From the NCBI RefSeq assembly GCF_963921235.1, contig NC_086123.1:11284001-11348000 (forward strand): a stretch of 64,000 nt of DNA, in the 5' to 3' direction. Position 1 is the first letter of the stretch. Each line of letters begins with the position of its first letter. The position numbers were made by a program, and so were the translations under genes. This DNA comes from Mobula hypostoma (lineage: Eukaryota). Below, piece after piece: positions 2,591 to 57,185 of the stretch. The notes under the pieces are model-generated. The model saw only the letters and a program-made list of their open reading frames with translations, ran no database searches and was not told the DNA's origin.

Positions 2591-2714
2591 TGCCTCTGCA
2601 GTCTCTTCAAAAGCTCCTCTACCTCAAAATACTTCTGAGCCAAAGCAATTGCAAGGAACAGACTGGGAAATAACAACAGTAATCTGAAGGGGAGAAAATA
2701 TAATGTTTTTATAA

Positions 2715-3125
2715 ACTTATTCATTGCTTGGAATCTGTGCAGCACTGGCAAGTTCAGCTTTGTTTGTCCATTGATGTTTTGTTTTATTCAGAAGGTGGTG
2801 ATAAGTCTCTTTCATGAACCACTGCAGTCTTCTTAGTGAAAGCACGTCTACTGTTCTGTTCAATCTGGAGTTCTGGGTTCTAGACCCACTGGTGATGAAT
2901 TATATTTAATATATTTGTAAACTGTACACATAATTTATTTCAGGTTAGGATAGTGTGCAGGTTGGTGTAGTTCCTATATATCTTGTACATTGTTGTTCTT
3001 AATAGTGAAGCCATAGCTTGGAATGTACTCTCAAAGTAGCCTAGTTGAGTAACCATAGTGCATTTTGTCAATGACAGATGTTATAGTTACTTTGAACTGG
3101 TGGTTGAGGCAATGAATATTTAAGA
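2715..3125 (-). mobile_element. Old, highly diverged CR1/L2-group LINE 3' region
   Basis: GCACTGGCAAG..CAGCTTT..GTCCAT...GAAGGTGGTG...GAACCACTGCAGTC pattern resembling ancient elasmobranch LINE 3' ends; no ORF. Confidence 0.4.
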
Positions 3126-3133
3126 GAGAGAGC

Positions 3134-4365
3134 AGACCATAAGATATTGGAGCAAAATCAGGCCATTTGGCCCATTAGATCTTCTCCATCATTCCAGCAG
3201 CCTCATGTGTGGCACCTCGTCAAAGGCCCATTGAAAGTGTAAGTACACAACATCAACTAATTCTCCTTTGTCTACCCTGCTTGTTATTTCTTCGAAGAAT
3301 TCCAACAGATTTGTCAGGCATGATTTTCCCTTGAGAAAACCATGCTGACTGTGGCCTATTTTATCATGTGCCTATAAGTACCCTGAGACCTCATCCTTAA
3401 TGATCAACTCCAGCATCATCGCAACCACTGGGGTCAGACTAACTGGACTAGAGTTTCCTTTCTTCTTGCTCTCTCCCTTCATGAAGAGTGAAGTGACATT
3501 TGCAATTTTCCAGTCTTCTGGAACTATTCCAGAATCTGGTGATTCTTGAAGTATCATTACTAATGCCTCCACAATTTCTCCAGCCACCTCTTTCAGAACT
3601 CTGTGGTGTTCACTATCTGGTCCGGGCATCTTATCTACCTTCAGACCTTTCAGTTTCCCAAGTACCTTCTCTCTATTTATGCTAACTTCACACACTTATT
3701 GACCCCTGACACCTGAAACTTCCCTCATACTGCTAGTGTCTTCCACAGTGAAGATTGATGCAAAATACTTATTCATTTTGTCCGCCATTTCCTCGTCACC
3801 CATTATTACCTCTCCAGCATCAATTTCTAGCGGTCTGATATCCACTCTTGCTTCTCTTTTACACTTTATATATCTGAAGAAACTTTTGGTATGGTCTTTA
3901 ATATTATTGGCTGGCTTACTTTTTTTATTCCATTTTTACCTTCTTAATGATTTTTTTAGTTGCCTTCTAATAACTTTTAAAAGCTTCTCAATCCTCTAAC
4001 TTCTCCCTAATTTTTGTTCTATTTTATGCCCTCTGTTTGGCTTTTCTGTTGGCTTTAACCTCTTGTCAGCCATGGTTGTGTTATCTTTACTTTAGAATAC
4101 CTCTTCCTCTTTGGGATGTATATATCCTGTGTCTTCCGAATTACCTCCTAAAATTCCAGCTATTGTTGCTCTGCCATCCTCCCTGCCAGTGTTCTTTTCC
4201 AATCAGTTCTGGTCAGCTCCTCTCTCATGCCTCTATAATTCCCTTTACCCCACTGTATTACTGATACATCTGACTATAACTTCTCCTTCTCAAATTTCAG
4301 GATGAATCTGATCAGATTGTGATCATTTGCTCCTAAGGGTTCTTTTTATCAAATGGGATCACATG
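3134..4365 (-). mobile_element. CR1 LINE ORF2 fragment with an internal deletion
   Basis: ORF 3372..3695 (KLKGLKVDKMPGPD..HHRVLKEVA..VPEDWKIANVT..PVSLT) is CR1 ORF2. The 3' tail (3134-3195) is joined directly to the AFDxVPH RT region at 3196. Confidence 0.92.
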
Positions 4366-25375: not shown

Positions 25376-26724
25376 TTAACATAAGCTTATGGGCGAAGGC
25401 AGGATTTTATAGATTAGTCTCTAATCAGGCTTGATGTCGTTAACTGGATATACAGGCTCAAAGGGACAATTGACTACTCTTGCTTCTATGTTTTTCCAAA
25501 GGGACAAATCATATTTTTAAAGAAGGCCTTTTATATATATCCCCAAAACCCCCTTGCGATATCAATCTGGTTCCATGCTCAATATCATTTAGTAACTACC
25601 TGCACAGACAGAAACAAGTTCAGCTTCCCGTTGAAAGGATTTGGTGAAATGGCAATGAACACAGGAGCATATTGCTGTTCCAGAGGATAAATGTTTCTGC
25701 TAACATTCAAGACATAACTCTGTTTCTTGTTGCTATTGAATACTTGCTGTTTTGAACTTTTGCTTCCATCTGAAATGGTTTTACTGAATCCTAACGAAAT
25801 CCGTCAAGGCTTTGGAGCTAGACAGTGTTTTCTCATTTTAAACCAAAGCTCTGCTCTATGTCAAATAAGTGAAAGAGAAAACAGAAGCAGCCAGGACCCA
25901 AACCTGAAACAATACCACCATCTCTAATATCAGCCTTTCACTGTGACGGAGAATCCAACCTTATATATTATCCCTTTCTCTCATCACCACGTCCCTGTTT
26001 CCTTAACATTGTGACATTACCCACACCCCCCACCACCATCTCAAGTGAACCTCTTTCCTCTTGCCCTGTTTCATTATCCATTAACCTTTTGCCCTGAAGG
26101 AAACTATGGGATTAAGAATGGCCTGAATTTTGAGTGTGCATCTCTCGGATCAGCAAACAGCATCACTGTGGAGGTGAAGCTAAATTTTATGTGAACATCC
26201 GCATAGAGACACAAGCACTCTGGGACTCCTGAGCACTTCTTCATTGGTCATCCCTGAACTTGTAGGTAAGATAGAACAGGAATAAGCCCCTTGGCCCTTA
26301 ACGCTTTTGCCGACCATGATGTCAGTCCAAGCTAAATCTACCTGCCTGTGCATGGTCTACATCACTCCATTCCCTTCCAATTTATATGCCTGTTGATATG
26401 CCTGTTTAAACACATGCCTTTTAAATATTAATATCGTTAAAATGACCTTCGTACATCCATAGAAGCATATCATATGGAAGTCAGCCAACCATCAACCAAT
26501 CCTATATTGATTCCAGTGTTTATTCTTCCTATATTCCCATCTACTCCCCCTCAGTTTCCACCACTCAGTCACACACTGGTACAATTTATCAGAATCAGTT
26601 TTAATATCACCGGCATATGTTGTGAAATTTGTTGTCTTTGCGGCAGCAGGACAATGCAATACATAATAATAGAGAATAAAACAGAGAATTACAGTGAGTG
26701 TATATATATATATATAATATAGTT

Positions 26725-27130
26725 GTTGTTGTTGTTCATCCTTCGTAGTCGAAGATGACCATGGCTTCAAAGTCAAATGGGAGATTGGTGGCTGTGGGTC
26801 TGGAGGTGACTGATGAGGCCAATCTGGGCCCTGAAGTCTCGCCCACATGTGGGACACAAGTGGGTGGGTGCTGTCATGGCAGTGGATGCTGCTCGGGCCT
26901 TGCGCACAGCACGCTTTCATTGCGCCTCGATGATGCGCCTGACTTCAGCTGCACGGGCTCCTGTGGTGATCTTGCTGCGCCAAGCTGGATGGTCGAGGGC
27001 AAGCGTCTCCCACGTGTTGATGTCGACACCTAGGCCTTTGAGGGACGCTTTCAGGCAGTCTTTGTAACGTCTTTTCTGCCCCCCGACTGAACGCTTGCCC
27101 TGACACAGTTCTCCGTACAGCAGCTTTTTG
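26725..27130 (-). mobile_element. RTE-clade LINE 3' end
   Basis: KKLLYGELCQGKRSVGGQKRRYKDCLKASLK..IN TWETLALDHPAWRS, then the C-terminal CPTCGRDF..IGLISHLQTH zinc finger; (CAA)n tail. Confidence 0.95.
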
Positions 27131-27440
27131 TGTGGGCACGTGGCCAAGTGGTTAAGGCATTGGACTAGCGACCTGAAGGTTGTAAGTTCGAGCCCCAGCG
27201 GAGGCAACATGTTGTGTCCTTGAGCAAGGCACTCAATCACACATTGCTCTGCGACGACACTAGTGCCAAGCTGTATGGGTCCTAATGCCCTTCCCTTGGA
27301 CAACATTGGTCTCGTGGAGAGACTTGCAGCATGGGCAACTGCCGGTCTTCCATACAACCTTGCCCAGGCCTGTGCCCTGGAGAGTGAAGACTTTCCAGGC
27401 GCAGATCCATGGTCTCGCAAGACTAACAAATGCCTCCTCC
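27131..27440 (+). mobile_element. tRNA-derived SINE with RTE-type 3' end
   Basis: A box TGGCCAAGTGG, B box GTTCGAGCCC, GTGTCCTTGAGCAAGGCACT core, 3' ATCCATGGTCTCGCAAGACTAAC. Confidence 0.88.
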
Positions 27441-29012
27441 TAATATAGTTACATTCAGTAAGTATTGCAAAAATAAAAATAACGAAAGTAGTGAGGGGGT
27501 TCATGGGTTTAATGTCCATTCAGAAATCAGATGGCAGAGGGAAAGATTCTGTTTCTGAATCATTGAGTACATGCATTTGGACTCCTGTACCTCCTTCCTG
27601 ATGGTAGCAATGAGAACAGGGCATGTCCTTAATGATTTACAGTGGTCAAATGGCTTACCAAACCACAGTTTGTTGGGATGTGAGAAGAAACTGGAACACC
27701 GAGACAAATCTCACACTATCGCATGGCGAAGAGCACTGAACGGATGCTGTGAGCCGATGGCTCTGTCATCTGAACCGCTGCAGCAACCCTCAAATAAGAT
27801 GATTTCATTAAATACTTGAGCATTATTCTTTATTCCCTGGCGTGCCTATAATTAATCTAGATCACACTATACAAGATTGTGGCCCTGTGCTAAGAATAAA
27901 ATAGTCATGGGGGCTGCCAATATCTTCAGTGTGAAAATATTGTCTTTCTAATTGTACTATCTAAATTTTATTGCATCAGAAGAGTTAATATTAAAATAAT
28001 AAGTTATAGTTAGCGTTAGTTTTTCTTTTCATTGCTTCCAATCTAGTCAGATAGGTACTCGTTCTATTCTGTGTCACAGCCAGCCAATTTTATACATAAT
28101 AGTTCTAAAGCATGCATGTATACACCCACACACTTCACACATCATACACAGATCACCCATTCATGTGAACACTCATACCCACAACTTGAGGGTGATAAAA
28201 ACATGGTTAAATTTCTGGGTTTTCTTGATCTACTTAAACACGAACAGGTTTTAACTGAAAGACATACGACCTTGATCAAATATAAGACTGAAGAGTTTGG
28301 AATGAACAAATAGACAATTTCTTTGATAATGTCAAATGGCATCAATTGCACACAAATGCCTTTGTGCCATATTCTGCTGTAGACCACACACAACATCTAA
28401 GGAGGTTGTAAGCAGCCTGAGGACCTCTTGAACTGTGAAGTTTGTGTCTTGTTTTGGAAAACAATCTCTGGAAAAGTCTTTCAAAAGAACTTTTGCACAG
28501 TTACTTTCTTTCATTTGTTCTTACAAAAGTTTCCAGTGTTTTAACGTTTTGTTTTTATTTAAATACAGTGCAGATTGTAACCTTTCAACGATGGAAAATT
28601 CTTAAATATTCAAGCACTCGAACTGATAATGAAGATAATTTTCGAGACACAATATACATTTCATTAGCCACATTATGTCTGAATTAATGAAATAAATCCG
28701 CTGAAATGTATGTTTGTTAGACATCAACATTAATTTGGATATGGGCTTAATAGCCTAATAACCAAAATTCACAATCAGGACTCATTAGCATTAGTGCCAC
28801 TATACTCTGTCCTATTAGCCCTGGGCTTCTATTTAATACCTATCCTGATAATGTTCTTTTCTATTCATTAGATGTGAACATGACATTGAAGCATTAATGA
28901 GCAAACTGAAAAGCTGACAGTGTTGGCTTGCTAAGCCTTTATGAAAATATAAATGCAACAACGAATATTGGCATTTTAACAATGCATAGGAGGAACAAGA
29001 ATTCCAGTTACA

Positions 29013-32901: not shown

Positions 32902-34820
32902 GAGTTAGAGTACATAGTATTTCACACACTTGAAACAGTGACAACAATTGCCATCGAACAAATATGGATATCACCTTGACTGGATGGGTAACCATTCAAC
33001 CCTTCCCATTGACATGTACACAAGCCTGAGAAAGGGAGCAGGCACCCCTTGTATCTTGATGGGACCACATGCTTATATATAATTATGTTGGTGGGCTCAT
33101 TCATAACCTAATTGCCTATTGATCTTCATCTTTATTTTGCCTACGTTCCTAGTTAAGGCTCCAATATAGATTGTATTCACACATGGACTGGCATCTTTTA
33201 CCCTGACTGAATAAAATCCATTGTCTCTAGCTGAAGGACTCCACACTAAGGGACCAAGCACCCTTAGTGGGGAGTTAAGTAATAGTCAGGCAAATGGGAC
33301 TAACTCAGATGGGAATCTTTGTTGGCATGGACCAATTAGTTGGTCTGAAGAGCCTGTTTTTCTGCTGTTGGATACTATGACTATAAACACCTCACCCTGA
33401 CTGCACACGCATGCACATACACGTGCACACCTCACGGCATTAACAGCCCTTCCCAGGTCTTTGCTGGCAACTCCGATACAGAATCAAAATCAGGTTTTTT
33501 TTTAATCACCAGCATGTGTTGTGAAATTTGATAACTTAGCAGCAGCAGTTCAATGCAATGCATAATATAGAAAGAAAATGAAATAATAATAATAAATAAT
33601 AAATCCTTCAATAGTTCTGAGGCTAAAGTTTCCATTCTAACCCTTTTCAGCAAAAGTTTATGATTTGGTTGGGAGCTATTCCAGTTCCTCTTCAGTCAGC
33701 TACTTCTCCATCCAAGCCTTATAATGTACTGCTGAAGTTCACCGGTCAATAACAGAAGATGCTTAGGTCGAGGGTTTCCAATAGGGAAGACAAAAGAGAA
33801 CCATTTTCAAACAATTTTATTAATACCTGGCCTTGACCATGACCTGTAGCAGTGAAGCTGAATACTTCATGGAGTCACCCAGATCAAGGAGCAATACAGC
33901 TGCATTCAAGTTAATTCAGCTCATTGACTGCTAAAGTGTGGGCTCAGAAAATGTTGTCTTTGGCCTAGAAATCTACAGAACACATTCAACATTTCAAGGG
34001 ACAGGAATGGGATTTTGAAAGCAATAATGGAACTTTAGTACTGAGAATTAGATGACATCTGTAATTTACTTCACAATGACATGGAAGTGAATTTTCTATG
34101 ATTGTAAAGCAGAGCATATGAATGTAAATAAACTTACTATTGGCTTGGTGTTAGGGTGCAATTATATTACTACTTCACAGAAATGGCCACAAGGTAGAAT
34201 TTCCAAGTGTTATGCTGATGTGTTAGATATTTGATGTGAAATTGGCAGAAACACTGCTTCTGGCCATTCATGTTTTTTTTGTGTTGTTCCACCTCCCACT
34301 CGCTTTAAAACCCTTGTAGAAATACCAGACACACCTTCTCCCAAAGTCCCGTCAAGTCCTGACCTGACTCTGTTTATTAAGAGTATCTGAAGGCTTATGG
34401 TGCTGGCCCAGGTTAAAAGGTGCTTAGAGGTTCCTTTGTTCCAGAATCACTTTTACTGAAATGGTTTAACCTCTACCTGCAAGCCTATTGCATTGTGAAT
34501 ATCTTGCCTGGGAGTAGAGTGCATTCTGTAAGCCCAAGATTTTTCAGGAACTTGGATTGAGCAGCACATGGAAGGAACTGTTATTTGCAATCTTTGTAAC
34601 TTATAAAATGTAAGACGTCTACTTGTTTTCATAGGGAGAAAGTAACCCAAGGCAAAATAATATAAAGTATAATCCTTCATGGATTAGATGACATGACAGA
34701 CCCTCAGTGATTAAAGGATAGTTTATCACAGCCACAGTACAATGGCAAACAAGCAACTAGTTAAAATGTGGATTACCTTTATAACAGTGTAATGACTTGC
34801 ATTCAGCAGAGACCCTGAAT

Positions 34821-43861: not shown

Positions 43862-44158
43862 GTCCACCACCCAAGACATGCTCTCTTCTCATTATTACCA
43901 TCAGAGAGGAGGTACAAGCCTGAAGGCATACACTCAATGCTTTAGGAACAGCTTCTTCCCCTCTGCCATCAGATTTCTGAATGGACAATGAACCCATGAA
44001 CACTATCTCACTATCTTTGCTATCTTTTTGCACTACTTAATTAATTTATATATTTTTTAAATTATTATCTTAATTTATAGTATTGCACTGTACTGCTGCC
44101 ACAAAACAATACATTTCATGAAATATGTCAGTGACAATAAATCTGATTCTGATTCTGA
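43862..44158 (+). mobile_element. Rex1-type LINE 3' end
   Basis: HHPRHALFSLLPSERRYK..FRNSFFPSAIRFLN; (TCTGAT)n tail. Confidence 0.85.
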
Positions 44159-56324: not shown

Positions 56325-57185
56325 CAAATATTATTTATTTATTTAGCTATACAGTGTGAAATAACACCCTTGCACCCCATCGAGCCGTGTCAACCAATAG
56401 CTCACTGATTTAATTCCAGCCTTATCATGGGACAATTTACAATGACCAATTAACCTACTAAATACACTCAAAAACTTCTATAGTTGTTCAGTGGAGAGCA
56501 TTCTGACAGGCTGCATCACTGTCTGGAATGGAGGGGCTACTGCACAGGACCGAAAGAAGCTACAGAAGTTTGTAAATATAGTCGGCTCCATCTTGGGCAC
56601 TAGCCTACAAAGTACCCAGGACATCCTTAGGGAGCAGTGTCTCAGAAAGGCAGTGTCCATTATTAAGGACATCAAGTACTGAGGGCATGCCCTTTTCTCA
56701 CTGTTACCATAAGGTAGGAGATACAGAAGCCTGAAGGCACACACTCAGTGATTCAGGAACAGCTTCTTCCCCTCTGCCATCTGATTCCTAAATGGACATT
56801 GAAGCTTTGGACACTACCTCACTTTTTTTAATATACAGTATTTCTGTTTTTGCACATTTTGTTAAATCTATTCAATATACGTAATTGATTTACTTGTTTA
56901 TTTATTATTATGTATTATTTTATTTATTATTTTCTCTCTCTCTCTCTGCTAGATTATGTATTGAACTGAACTGCTGCTGCTAAGTTAACAAGTTTCAATC
57001 ACATGCCGGTGATAATAAACCTGATTCTGATTCTAACTGGACTGTGGGACGAAACTGGAGCACCTGGGGAGAAACCCACACACTTCACGGGAAGCACGTA
57101 CAAACGTTTTTACAGTGGACACCAGAATTGAACTTTAAACTCCAACGCCCCAAGCATTGTGATAACCAATACCATGGCACCCCTT
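56325..57185. mobile_element. HE1/V-SINE-like SINE (-) split by a Rex1-type LINE 3' fragment (+, ~56463-57033)
   Basis: VESILTGCITVWNGGATAQDRKKLQK..CLRKAVSIIKD; (TCTGAT)n tail; the SINE resumes at CTGGACTGTGGGACGAAACTGGAGCACC. Confidence 0.88.

What the first reader, a model, noticed from the sequence alone, without database searches (positions are those of the whole stretch)
26715..27450. Head-to-head RTE-LINE / tRNA-SINE chimera bounded by a single TSD (two-RNA twin priming?)
Seen: a 5'-truncated RTE (minus, 26725-27130, (CAA)n tail facing left) is joined with no spacer to the 5' end of a full-length SINE (plus, 27131-27440, RTE-type tail facing right). One 10-bp duplication, TAATATAGTT (26715-26724 / 27441-27450), flanks the pair; there is none at the internal junction, and the host LINE tail is continuous across the site. 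Established: twin priming normally uses one RNA, and template-switch chimeras are head-to-tail. Inference: both target strands primed reverse transcription on two different RNAs in one event, implying a dimeric RTE RNP and identifying this RTE as the SINE's mobiliser.
Basis: partly seen in the sequence, partly recalled or inferred. Interest (0 to 1): 0.7.

Follow-up and report, generated by a model that had tools for sequence, protein, structure and literature searches.

The report
Back-to-back LINE–SINE insert, one duplication
A cut-short RTE-like jumping gene and a complete tRNA-type SINE sit head-to-head inside one 10-base target duplication in a ray genome. They most likely landed in one event that copied two RNAs from the two ends of one DNA break, which is already described for human L1 but not, in the papers I found, for this LINE type.

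Summary
TAATATAGTT occurs at 26715-26724 and 27441-27450. Between the two copies lie the 3' 405 nt of an RTE-like LINE on the minus strand (26725-27129), with its (AAC)n tail abutting the left copy, and a full-length tRNA-headed SINE on the plus strand. The SINE starts at 27130, not 27131, and ends at 27440. No repeat longer than 4 bp lies at the internal junction.

The 10-bp duplication matches the 10-12 bp peak reported for RTE-clade inserts. The LINE tail overlaps the target by GTT/AAC, as expected for direct priming. The best reading (about 0.6) is one event with two templates copied from the two staggered nicks and then joined.

This is not a new principle:
- "Dual priming" was proposed for L1 in 2010.
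- Opposite-orientation two-RNA L1 inserts have been seen in cell experiments.
- Antisense Alu, tRNA and 5S/L1 chimeras have been catalogued.

A dimeric RNP is not implied. The tie between this LINE and the SINE rests on a weak similarity over about 30 nt of tail.

The orthologue test failed. Contigs of three related rays break in the high-copy host repeat on both sides. Two nested insertions (about 0.27) therefore remain possible.

Unchecked notes from this scan report two other head-to-head SINE chimeras in the same genome.

The parts
26715..26724 (.). Left copy of the 10-bp target-site duplication TAATATAGTT. Its last three bases, GTT, are also in register with the LINE tail.
26725..26736 (-). 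LINE microsatellite tail, (AAC)4 on the minus strand (GTT x4 on plus). It is 5 units if the GTT of the TSD is counted.
   Evidence: Homologous LINE copies also end in AAC/CAA-type repeats.
26737..26772 (-). LINE 3'UTR of 36 nt, with the conserved hairpin TCATCTTCG-ACTA-CGAAGGATGA.
   Evidence: The same hairpin is present in L001.
26773..27129 (-). 5'-truncated LINE ORF C-terminus: 118 codons plus the natural stop at 26773-26775. It begins KKLLYGELCQGKRS and carries a C2H2 finger. One in-frame stop lies at 26917-26919, where the family has CGA.
   Evidence: (26919 A>G in the family)
27130..27440 (+). Full-length tRNA-headed SINE of 311 nt from a very high-copy family. Only 3 listed differences from the family majority.
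   Evidence: tables 2, 3, 5c
27134..27196 (+). tRNA-like head of the SINE. An A-box-like TGGCCAAGTGG and a B-box-like AGTTCGAGCCC were read by eye.
   Evidence: 22.3 bits, E 0.14, below the gathering score
27441..27450 (.). Right copy of the TSD, TAATATAGTT.
26588..26714 (+). Left half of the older high-copy host repeat that was the target. The insert lies in its variable AT-rich stretch.
27451..27629 (+). Right half of the host repeat.

Best explanation
The insert is a single retrotransposition event with two templates, called 'dual priming' or two-RNA twin priming.

Proposed steps:
1. An RTE-type endonuclease made two nicks 10 bp apart in the AT-rich part of an older repeat.
2. The plus-strand end ...TAATATAGTT-3' paired through GTT with the (CAA)n tail of an RTE RNA. 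It was extended rightward into antisense LINE cDNA, which stopped or was cut after 405 nt.
3. The minus-strand end ...AACTATATTA-3' primed on the 3' end of a SINE RNA and was extended to that RNA's 5' end.
4. The two cDNA-extended ends were joined with 0-1 nt of overlap, and the gaps were filled. This leaves LINE(-)/SINE(+) head-to-head inside one TSD.

Shown: the anatomy, the TSD, the tail overlap, the full-length SINE 5' end and the lack of an internal TSD.

Inferred: that the two parts arrived together, the order of priming, and the joining pathway.
For: - One exact 10-bp TSD flanks the pair, and no repeat longer than 4 bp lies at the internal junction.
- Ten bp fits the 10-12 bp TSD peak reported for RTE-clade LINEs (PMC4245944, citing Ichiyanagi & Okada 2008). 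An independent RTE-type insertion would normally bring its own TSD of that size.
- Read in LINE orientation the TSD is AACTATATTA. It starts with A and continues the (AAC)n register, as reported for animal RTEs with (CAA)n tails (PMC6007223). The LINE was therefore primed at exactly the nick that bounds the shared TSD.
- The SINE starts at its family 5' end, 27130 (table 5c). This fits a cDNA that ran to the end of its RNA.
- Both parts are young. The LINE part has 8 listed differences in 405 nt, 5 of them CpG decay. The SINE has 3 in 311 nt. The two TSD copies are identical.
- The staggered-nick geometry gives two 3' overhangs of 10 nt. PMC4245944 argues that this length is needed for a second priming.
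- There is precedent in L1.
- Unchecked scan notes report other head-to-head SINE chimeras in this genome.
Against: - No orthologous or allelic state could be read. Contigs of related species B, F and C stop at about 26610 and about 27600 in the host repeat, and 26690-26749 was masked.
- The SINE end CCTCCTCC has no complementarity to the primer end ...ATTA.
- The SINE's 3' end is fixed only by the TSD.
- The SINE tail is only weakly like the LINE tail. A stringent RTE reverse transcriptase using both RNAs is therefore not assured.
- The LINE part shows 5 CpG decays and the SINE none among about 10 CpGs. This is not significant, but it hints that the LINE part could be older.
- My rough estimate (inference) is that chance abutments are not negligible over a whole genome with very many SINEs.
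- I did not check the junction in raw reads of the source individual.
Confidence: 0.6

Rival explanations
1. Two independent nested insertions. Either the SINE went in first with the 10-bp TSD and the LINE later used the same GTT| nick at the TSD/SINE boundary, or the LINE went in first and the SINE later landed at the LINE 5' end/TSD boundary. In both cases the second event left no TSD, or one of only 2-4 bp.
For: - The site is an AT-rich stretch that this SINE family hits repeatedly. Other loci have the SINE in the same host-repeat region (table 5c).
- The left TSD copy keeps the sequence 5' of the nick, and GTT is the only match to the (CAA)n tail nearby. Re-use of that nick is therefore favoured.
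- A trivial GT/TTGT match at the junction is compatible with a 2-4 bp TSD.
- CpG decay was seen in the LINE part only.
- The SINE family is extremely abundant (table 2), so some chance abutments must exist genome-wide.
Against: - It needs base-exact placement.
- It also needs an atypical insertion almost without a TSD, for a clade whose TSDs peak at 10-12 bp.
- Neither the TSD nor the SINE 5' end lost or gained a base.
Confidence: 0.27
2. One event without a second priming. An ordinary TPRT insertion of one element captured a free cDNA of the other by end-joining. Alternatively, the 726-bp unit is a retrocopy or duplication of a composite that already existed elsewhere.
For: Ends extended by reverse transcriptase can take up extra cDNA products before ligation in L1 experiments (PMC11702581). 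No spacer lies at the junction.
Against: - Both natural 3' ends abut the TSD copies, and the LINE tail overlaps the target. Priming at both nicks predicts this; random capture does not.
- A retrocopy from one RNA cannot carry outward-facing tails at both ends.
- No second copy of the junction is in the window or among the listed contigs. That list is heavily cut, so this is weak evidence.
Confidence: 0.09
3. Assembly artefact joining two repeats.
For: Both parts are repeats, and I did not lay reads of the source species on the junction.
Against: - An exact TSD at both outer borders is not what a mis-join produces.
- The host repeat continues colinearly across the insert.
- The unique flanks on both sides are found, colinear with the window, in three related species (table 8).
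Confidence: 0.04

Closest known systems
Antisense Alu/L1, tRNA/L1, 5S/L1 and U5/L1 chimeric insertions in mammals (Cell Genomics 2026, PMC13174262)
   Same: A SINE or small RNA and a LINE 3' part lie in opposite orientation within one TSD. The authors attribute this to two reverse transcriptions started from the two ends of one TPRT break.
   Different: Those cases use L1 machinery, with poly(A)/poly(T) tails and 7-17 bp TSDs. Here the LINE is RTE-like with a (CAA)n tail and a 10-bp TSD, the SINE is tRNA-headed with its own non-A tail, and the host is a cartilaginous fish. Their calls rest on multi-species dating, which I could not do.
'Dual priming' (Meyer et al. 2010, Mob DNA 1:7, PMC2837659)
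   Same: The model is the same: two RNAs anneal to the two nick sites and are each reverse transcribed.
   Different: It was proposed only as a speculation, for L1 loci with 5' poly(T), where the second template could not be identified. Here both templates are identifiable and different.
Two-transcript opposite-orientation L1-mediated insertions in induced cells (Mendez-Dorantes et al. 2024 preprint, PMC11702581)
   Same: Opposite DNA ends are extended by reverse transcriptase from different templates and then ligated. The junctions show microhomology or untemplated bases.
   Different: Those are experimental, L1-driven events in human cells, and the templates were mostly mRNAs. This is a germline-fixed event of another LINE clade.
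Classic twin priming (Ostertag & Kazazian 2001)
   Same: The second nick's 3' overhang is used as a primer, the TSD is kept, and an inverted segment is joined internally.
   Different: Classic twin priming uses one RNA and primes internally, so the inverted part has no tail. Here there are two RNAs, each primed at its own 3' end.
U6/L1-type template-switch or RNA-ligation chimeras
   Same: Two RNAs end up in one insert with one TSD.
   Different: Those are head-to-tail in the same orientation. This insert is head-to-head.

Membership tests
RTE-clade LINE (the minus-strand fragment) | Compact element with one long ORF holding an AP-endonuclease and a reverse transcriptase, and no large ORF1 | tested here: met
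   Tested on a homologous, near-complete copy, not on the fragment itself. L001 has ORF 351-2681 (776 aa; Exo_endo_phos + RVT_1) running into 2620-3594 (324 aa, the C-terminus homologous to the window). That is about 3.3 kb in all. Only a short 87-aa ORF lies upstream.
RTE-clade LINE (the minus-strand fragment) | Very short 3'UTR ending in a short microsatellite such as (CAA)n | tested here: met
   The 3'UTR is 36 nt and is followed by (AAC)4-5. L001 and P0002 end the same way.
RTE-clade LINE (the minus-strand fragment) | TSD of about 10-12 bp, starting with A for (CAA)n-tailed animal RTEs | tested here: met
   The TSD is 10 bp and reads AACTATATTA in LINE orientation. The criteria come from PMC4245944 and PMC6007223.
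RTE-clade LINE (the minus-strand fragment) | The reverse-transcriptase domain groups with the RTE clade in a phylogeny | not tested
   No reference RT sequences of LINE clades were available from the tools. The fragment itself lacks the RT domain.
tRNA-derived SINE | tRNA-related 5' head with pol III A and B boxes | tested here: inconclusive
   Rfam tRNA scores 22.3 bits, against a gathering score of 29. ARAGORN finds none. A- and B-box-like motifs were read by eye.
tRNA-derived SINE | Short, non-coding, with many dispersed copies sharing defined ends | tested here: met
   The element is 311 nt. Family depth is in the millions in runs of three related species. Other loci join their flanks at 27130.
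tRNA-derived SINE | 3' tail shared with its partner LINE | tested here: inconclusive
   The free local alignment gives p about 0.1. Anchored at the 3' end, the last 30 nt give p < 1/3000, but I chose the anchor after looking at the sequences. MAFFT gives a different alignment. The terminal repeats differ.
Classic one-RNA twin priming | The inverted and direct segments derive from one RNA, and the inverted segment is primed internally | tested here: not met
   The two segments belong to different families with no similarity outside about 30 nt of tail. Each carries its own 3' end.
Two-template ('dual') priming chimera | One TSD around both parts, none between them, and both 3' ends outward and abutting the TSD copies | tested here: met
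   The SINE 3' end is known only to within a few nt.
Two-template ('dual') priming chimera | Both parts arrived together: related genomes show the site empty or doubly filled, never singly filled | not testable with these tools
   Contigs of species B, F and C end in the host repeat at about 26610 and about 27600, and the left junction was masked. No protein-based route to other loci worked.
Template-switch / RNA-ligation chimera | Both parts in the same orientation, head-to-tail | tested here: not met
   The parts lie on opposite strands with their 5' ends joined.

The most novel reading that the evidence does not exclude
Rays may carry an RTE-clade machinery that regularly loads its own RNA and a SINE RNA, or another small RNA, onto the two ends of one staggered break. 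This insert, the reported U2/SINE head-to-head insert and the SINE at a Penelope inversion axis would then be products of one recurrent pathway. That would give the first natural, template-resolved proof of dual priming outside L1. It would also show physical co-residence of a LINE RNA and its parasite RNA at the integration site.
Probability: 0.15. Interest if true: 0.65.

Novelty: new variant of a known kind. Interest (0 to 1): 0.4.

Why it matters
If the two parts did arrive together, this is a clean natural example of two-template priming in which both RNAs can be named. It would come from a LINE clade that recognises specific 3' tails rather than poly(A). It would extend a mechanism so far documented for mammalian L1 to RTE-type elements and to cartilaginous fish. 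It would also place a LINE RNA and a SINE RNA at the same break at the same time, which bears on how SINEs borrow LINE machinery. As a single locus without an orthologue test, it is an anecdote that justifies a genome-wide census. It is not a proof.

Tried and rejected
- Orthologue test. I laid contigs of runs of three related species (B twice, F, C) on 25900-28300. The unique flanks are present: B is 2-3% diverged, F and C 4-6%. Every flank contig stops in the high-copy host repeat, and 26690-26749 was masked.
- Other copies in the window: none of either element.
- Exact-protein look-up of the 200-aa ORF that spans the junction: not on record.
- Word search with that ORF: only LINE C-termini were found, and nothing spans the junction.
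- Word search with a SINE ORF: nothing.
- JGI metagenome scan for a CpG-free SINE 22-mer: nothing.
- ESM Atlas on the LINE C-terminus: uninformative.
- Pfam on the LINE C-terminus: only a weak C2H2 finger.
- Rfam on L001 and L002: no 5' ribozyme.
- Template switching as the cause: rejected, because it would give head-to-tail order.
- A read-through retrocopy: rejected, because one RNA cannot give two outward tails.
- A hidden TSD: rejected above 4 bp.
- A frameshift in the LINE ORF: I suspected one at first, but it turned out to be a single in-frame CGA>TGA stop.

Full report
**What is there**

The 10-mer TAATATAGTT occurs at 26715-26724 and 27441-27450. A 10-mer pair somewhere in 1.4 kb is about what chance gives, and one search also lists three exact 9-mer pairs. 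The weight lies in position. The left copy abuts a LINE tail and the right copy abuts the end of a SINE.

Everything between the two copies is accounted for by two elements.

**The LINE part (26725-27129, minus strand)**

- It consists of (AAC)4, or five units with the GTT of the TSD.
- A 36-nt 3'UTR follows, with a 9-bp hairpin.
- Then comes an in-frame C-terminal reading frame of 118 codons, starting KKLLYGELCQGKRS, with a C2H2 finger.
- What first looked like a frameshift is a single in-frame stop at 26917-26919. The family has G at 26919, so CGA became TGA.
- A word search found six proteins 62-75% identical to this C-terminus.
- One of them lies on a 4.1-kb metagenome contig, L001. That contig carries a near-complete element of about 3.3 kb with one long ORF: endonuclease plus RT, 776 aa, running into the 324-aa C-terminus.
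- L001 has the same 3' hairpin and a short AAC-like end.
- Architecture, tail and TSD type are those of the RTE clade. I could not place the RT in a phylogeny.

**The SINE part (27130-27440, plus strand)**

- The head matches the tRNA model weakly: 22.3 bits against a gathering score of 29.
- Contigs from three related ray species laid on the region show an enormous family, with depth in the millions. That is 20-50 times the depth of the LINE family in species B (X5, X6) and far more in F and C (table 2).
- This copy differs from the family majority at only three listed places.
- Contigs from other loci join unrelated flanks to the SINE at 27130 (table 5c: 26628>27130 and 26668>27130).
- No spacer is present, and no direct repeat above 4 bp lies at the junction. 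The TTGT/GT matches come from the (GTT)n tail.

**The host**

The insert lies in a high-copy older repeat. Three other copies in the window align on both sides of the insert.

**How it most likely arose**

Two nicks 10 bp apart give two 3' overhangs. The plus-strand end ...TAATATAGTT-3' can pair by GTT with the (CAA)n tail of the LINE RNA. The TSD read in LINE orientation, AACTATATTA, continues the AAC register and starts with A. Nishiyama and Ohshima report this for animal RTEs with (CAA)n tails (PMC6007223).

The minus-strand end primes on the SINE RNA and runs to its 5' end. The two extended ends are then joined.

Ten bp is the RTE-clade TSD size: a peak at 10-12 bp is cited in PMC4245944. 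The same paper argues that overhangs of 10-20 nt are what a second priming needs. An independent RTE-type insertion would normally bring its own 10-12 bp TSD, and there is none. I rate this reading 0.6.

**Rivals**

- *Two nested insertions (0.27).* These need base-exact placement and an insertion almost without a TSD. However, the site is an AT-rich stretch that this SINE family hits repeatedly (table 5c). The left TSD copy preserves the nick context, and GTT is the only local match for the LINE tail. With so many SINE copies, some chance abutments must exist. My rough estimate puts the number expected by chance and the number expected from an L1-like rate of antisense chimeras within an order of magnitude of each other (inference).
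- *Relative ages.* The LINE part shows 8 listed differences, 5 of them CpG decays. The SINE shows 3 and no CpG decay among about 10 CpGs. The difference is not significant and leans slightly towards unequal age.
- *cDNA capture or a copied composite (0.09).*
- *Mis-assembly (0.04).*

**The decisive test failed**

Related species B, F and C have the unique flanks: B is 2-3% diverged, F and C 4-6%. All flank contigs end in the host repeat at about 26610 and about 27600. The left junction was masked as a simple repeat. Routes through proteins or metagenomes gave no further loci.

**Comparison with what is known**

- 'Dual priming' by two RNAs on the two nicks was proposed for L1 in 2010 (PMC2837659).
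- Nine two-transcript L1-mediated inserts were recovered in cells. Those in opposite orientation were explained by ligation of ends extended by reverse transcriptase from different templates (PMC11702581).
- A 2026 catalogue lists tRNA/L1, 5S/L1 and U5/L1 chimeras that are mostly antisense. It also lists 452 Alu/L1 chimeras with one TSD, of which 11-17% are antisense (PMC13174262).

The kind is therefore known. What differs here is the clade (RTE-like, tail-specific), the host (a ray), and that both templates carry their own natural 3' ends.

A dimeric RNP does not follow from the structure. The link between this LINE and the SINE is weak:
- A free local alignment of the tails is not significant.
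- A 3'-anchored alignment of the last 30 nt is significant, but I chose the anchor after looking.
- MAFFT prefers another alignment.
- The terminal repeats differ.

**Earlier notes of this scan**

These notes are unchecked. They told me the genome is a ray's. They also report a U2 5' end fused head-to-head to a SINE within one TSD (s1-142960), a tRNA-SINE at the inversion axis of a Penelope fold-back (s1-144836), and several twin-primed L1s. They raise the chance of a recurrent pathway but are not evidence.

**Verdict**

The mechanism is probably right in outline but unproven.

Noticed in passing
window 26588-26714 and 27451-27629; other copies at 43875-44153, 56682-57031 and 33483-33578: A very high-copy interspersed repeat starts with (AGAATC)n-like units and has a variable AT-rich middle. 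In species B this SINE family is inserted into other copies of the same repeat (table 5c). This suggests a preferred target.
   Followed up: partly
L001 1-4145 (ENA metagenome contig k119_1695128): A near-complete RTE-like element sits in a metagenome assembly. It has EN+RT of 776 aa plus a C-terminus of 324 aa with one frameshift, and shares the ray element's 3' hairpin. Rfam finds no HDV-like ribozyme at its 5' end.
   Followed up: partly
window 26917-26919: The only break in the LINE reading frame is a CGA>TGA change at a CpG, so the copy was otherwise intact when it went in.
   Followed up: yes
window 26068: Species B and F carry 19 extra bases (TTTCACAGAAGCACCATAT) after 26068 that the window lacks. 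This is an indel in the unique left flank (table 4).
   Followed up: no
window 26305-26385: Contig depth rises about tenfold over the neighbouring unique flank in all four runs (table 2). This points to a short low-copy repeat.
   Followed up: no
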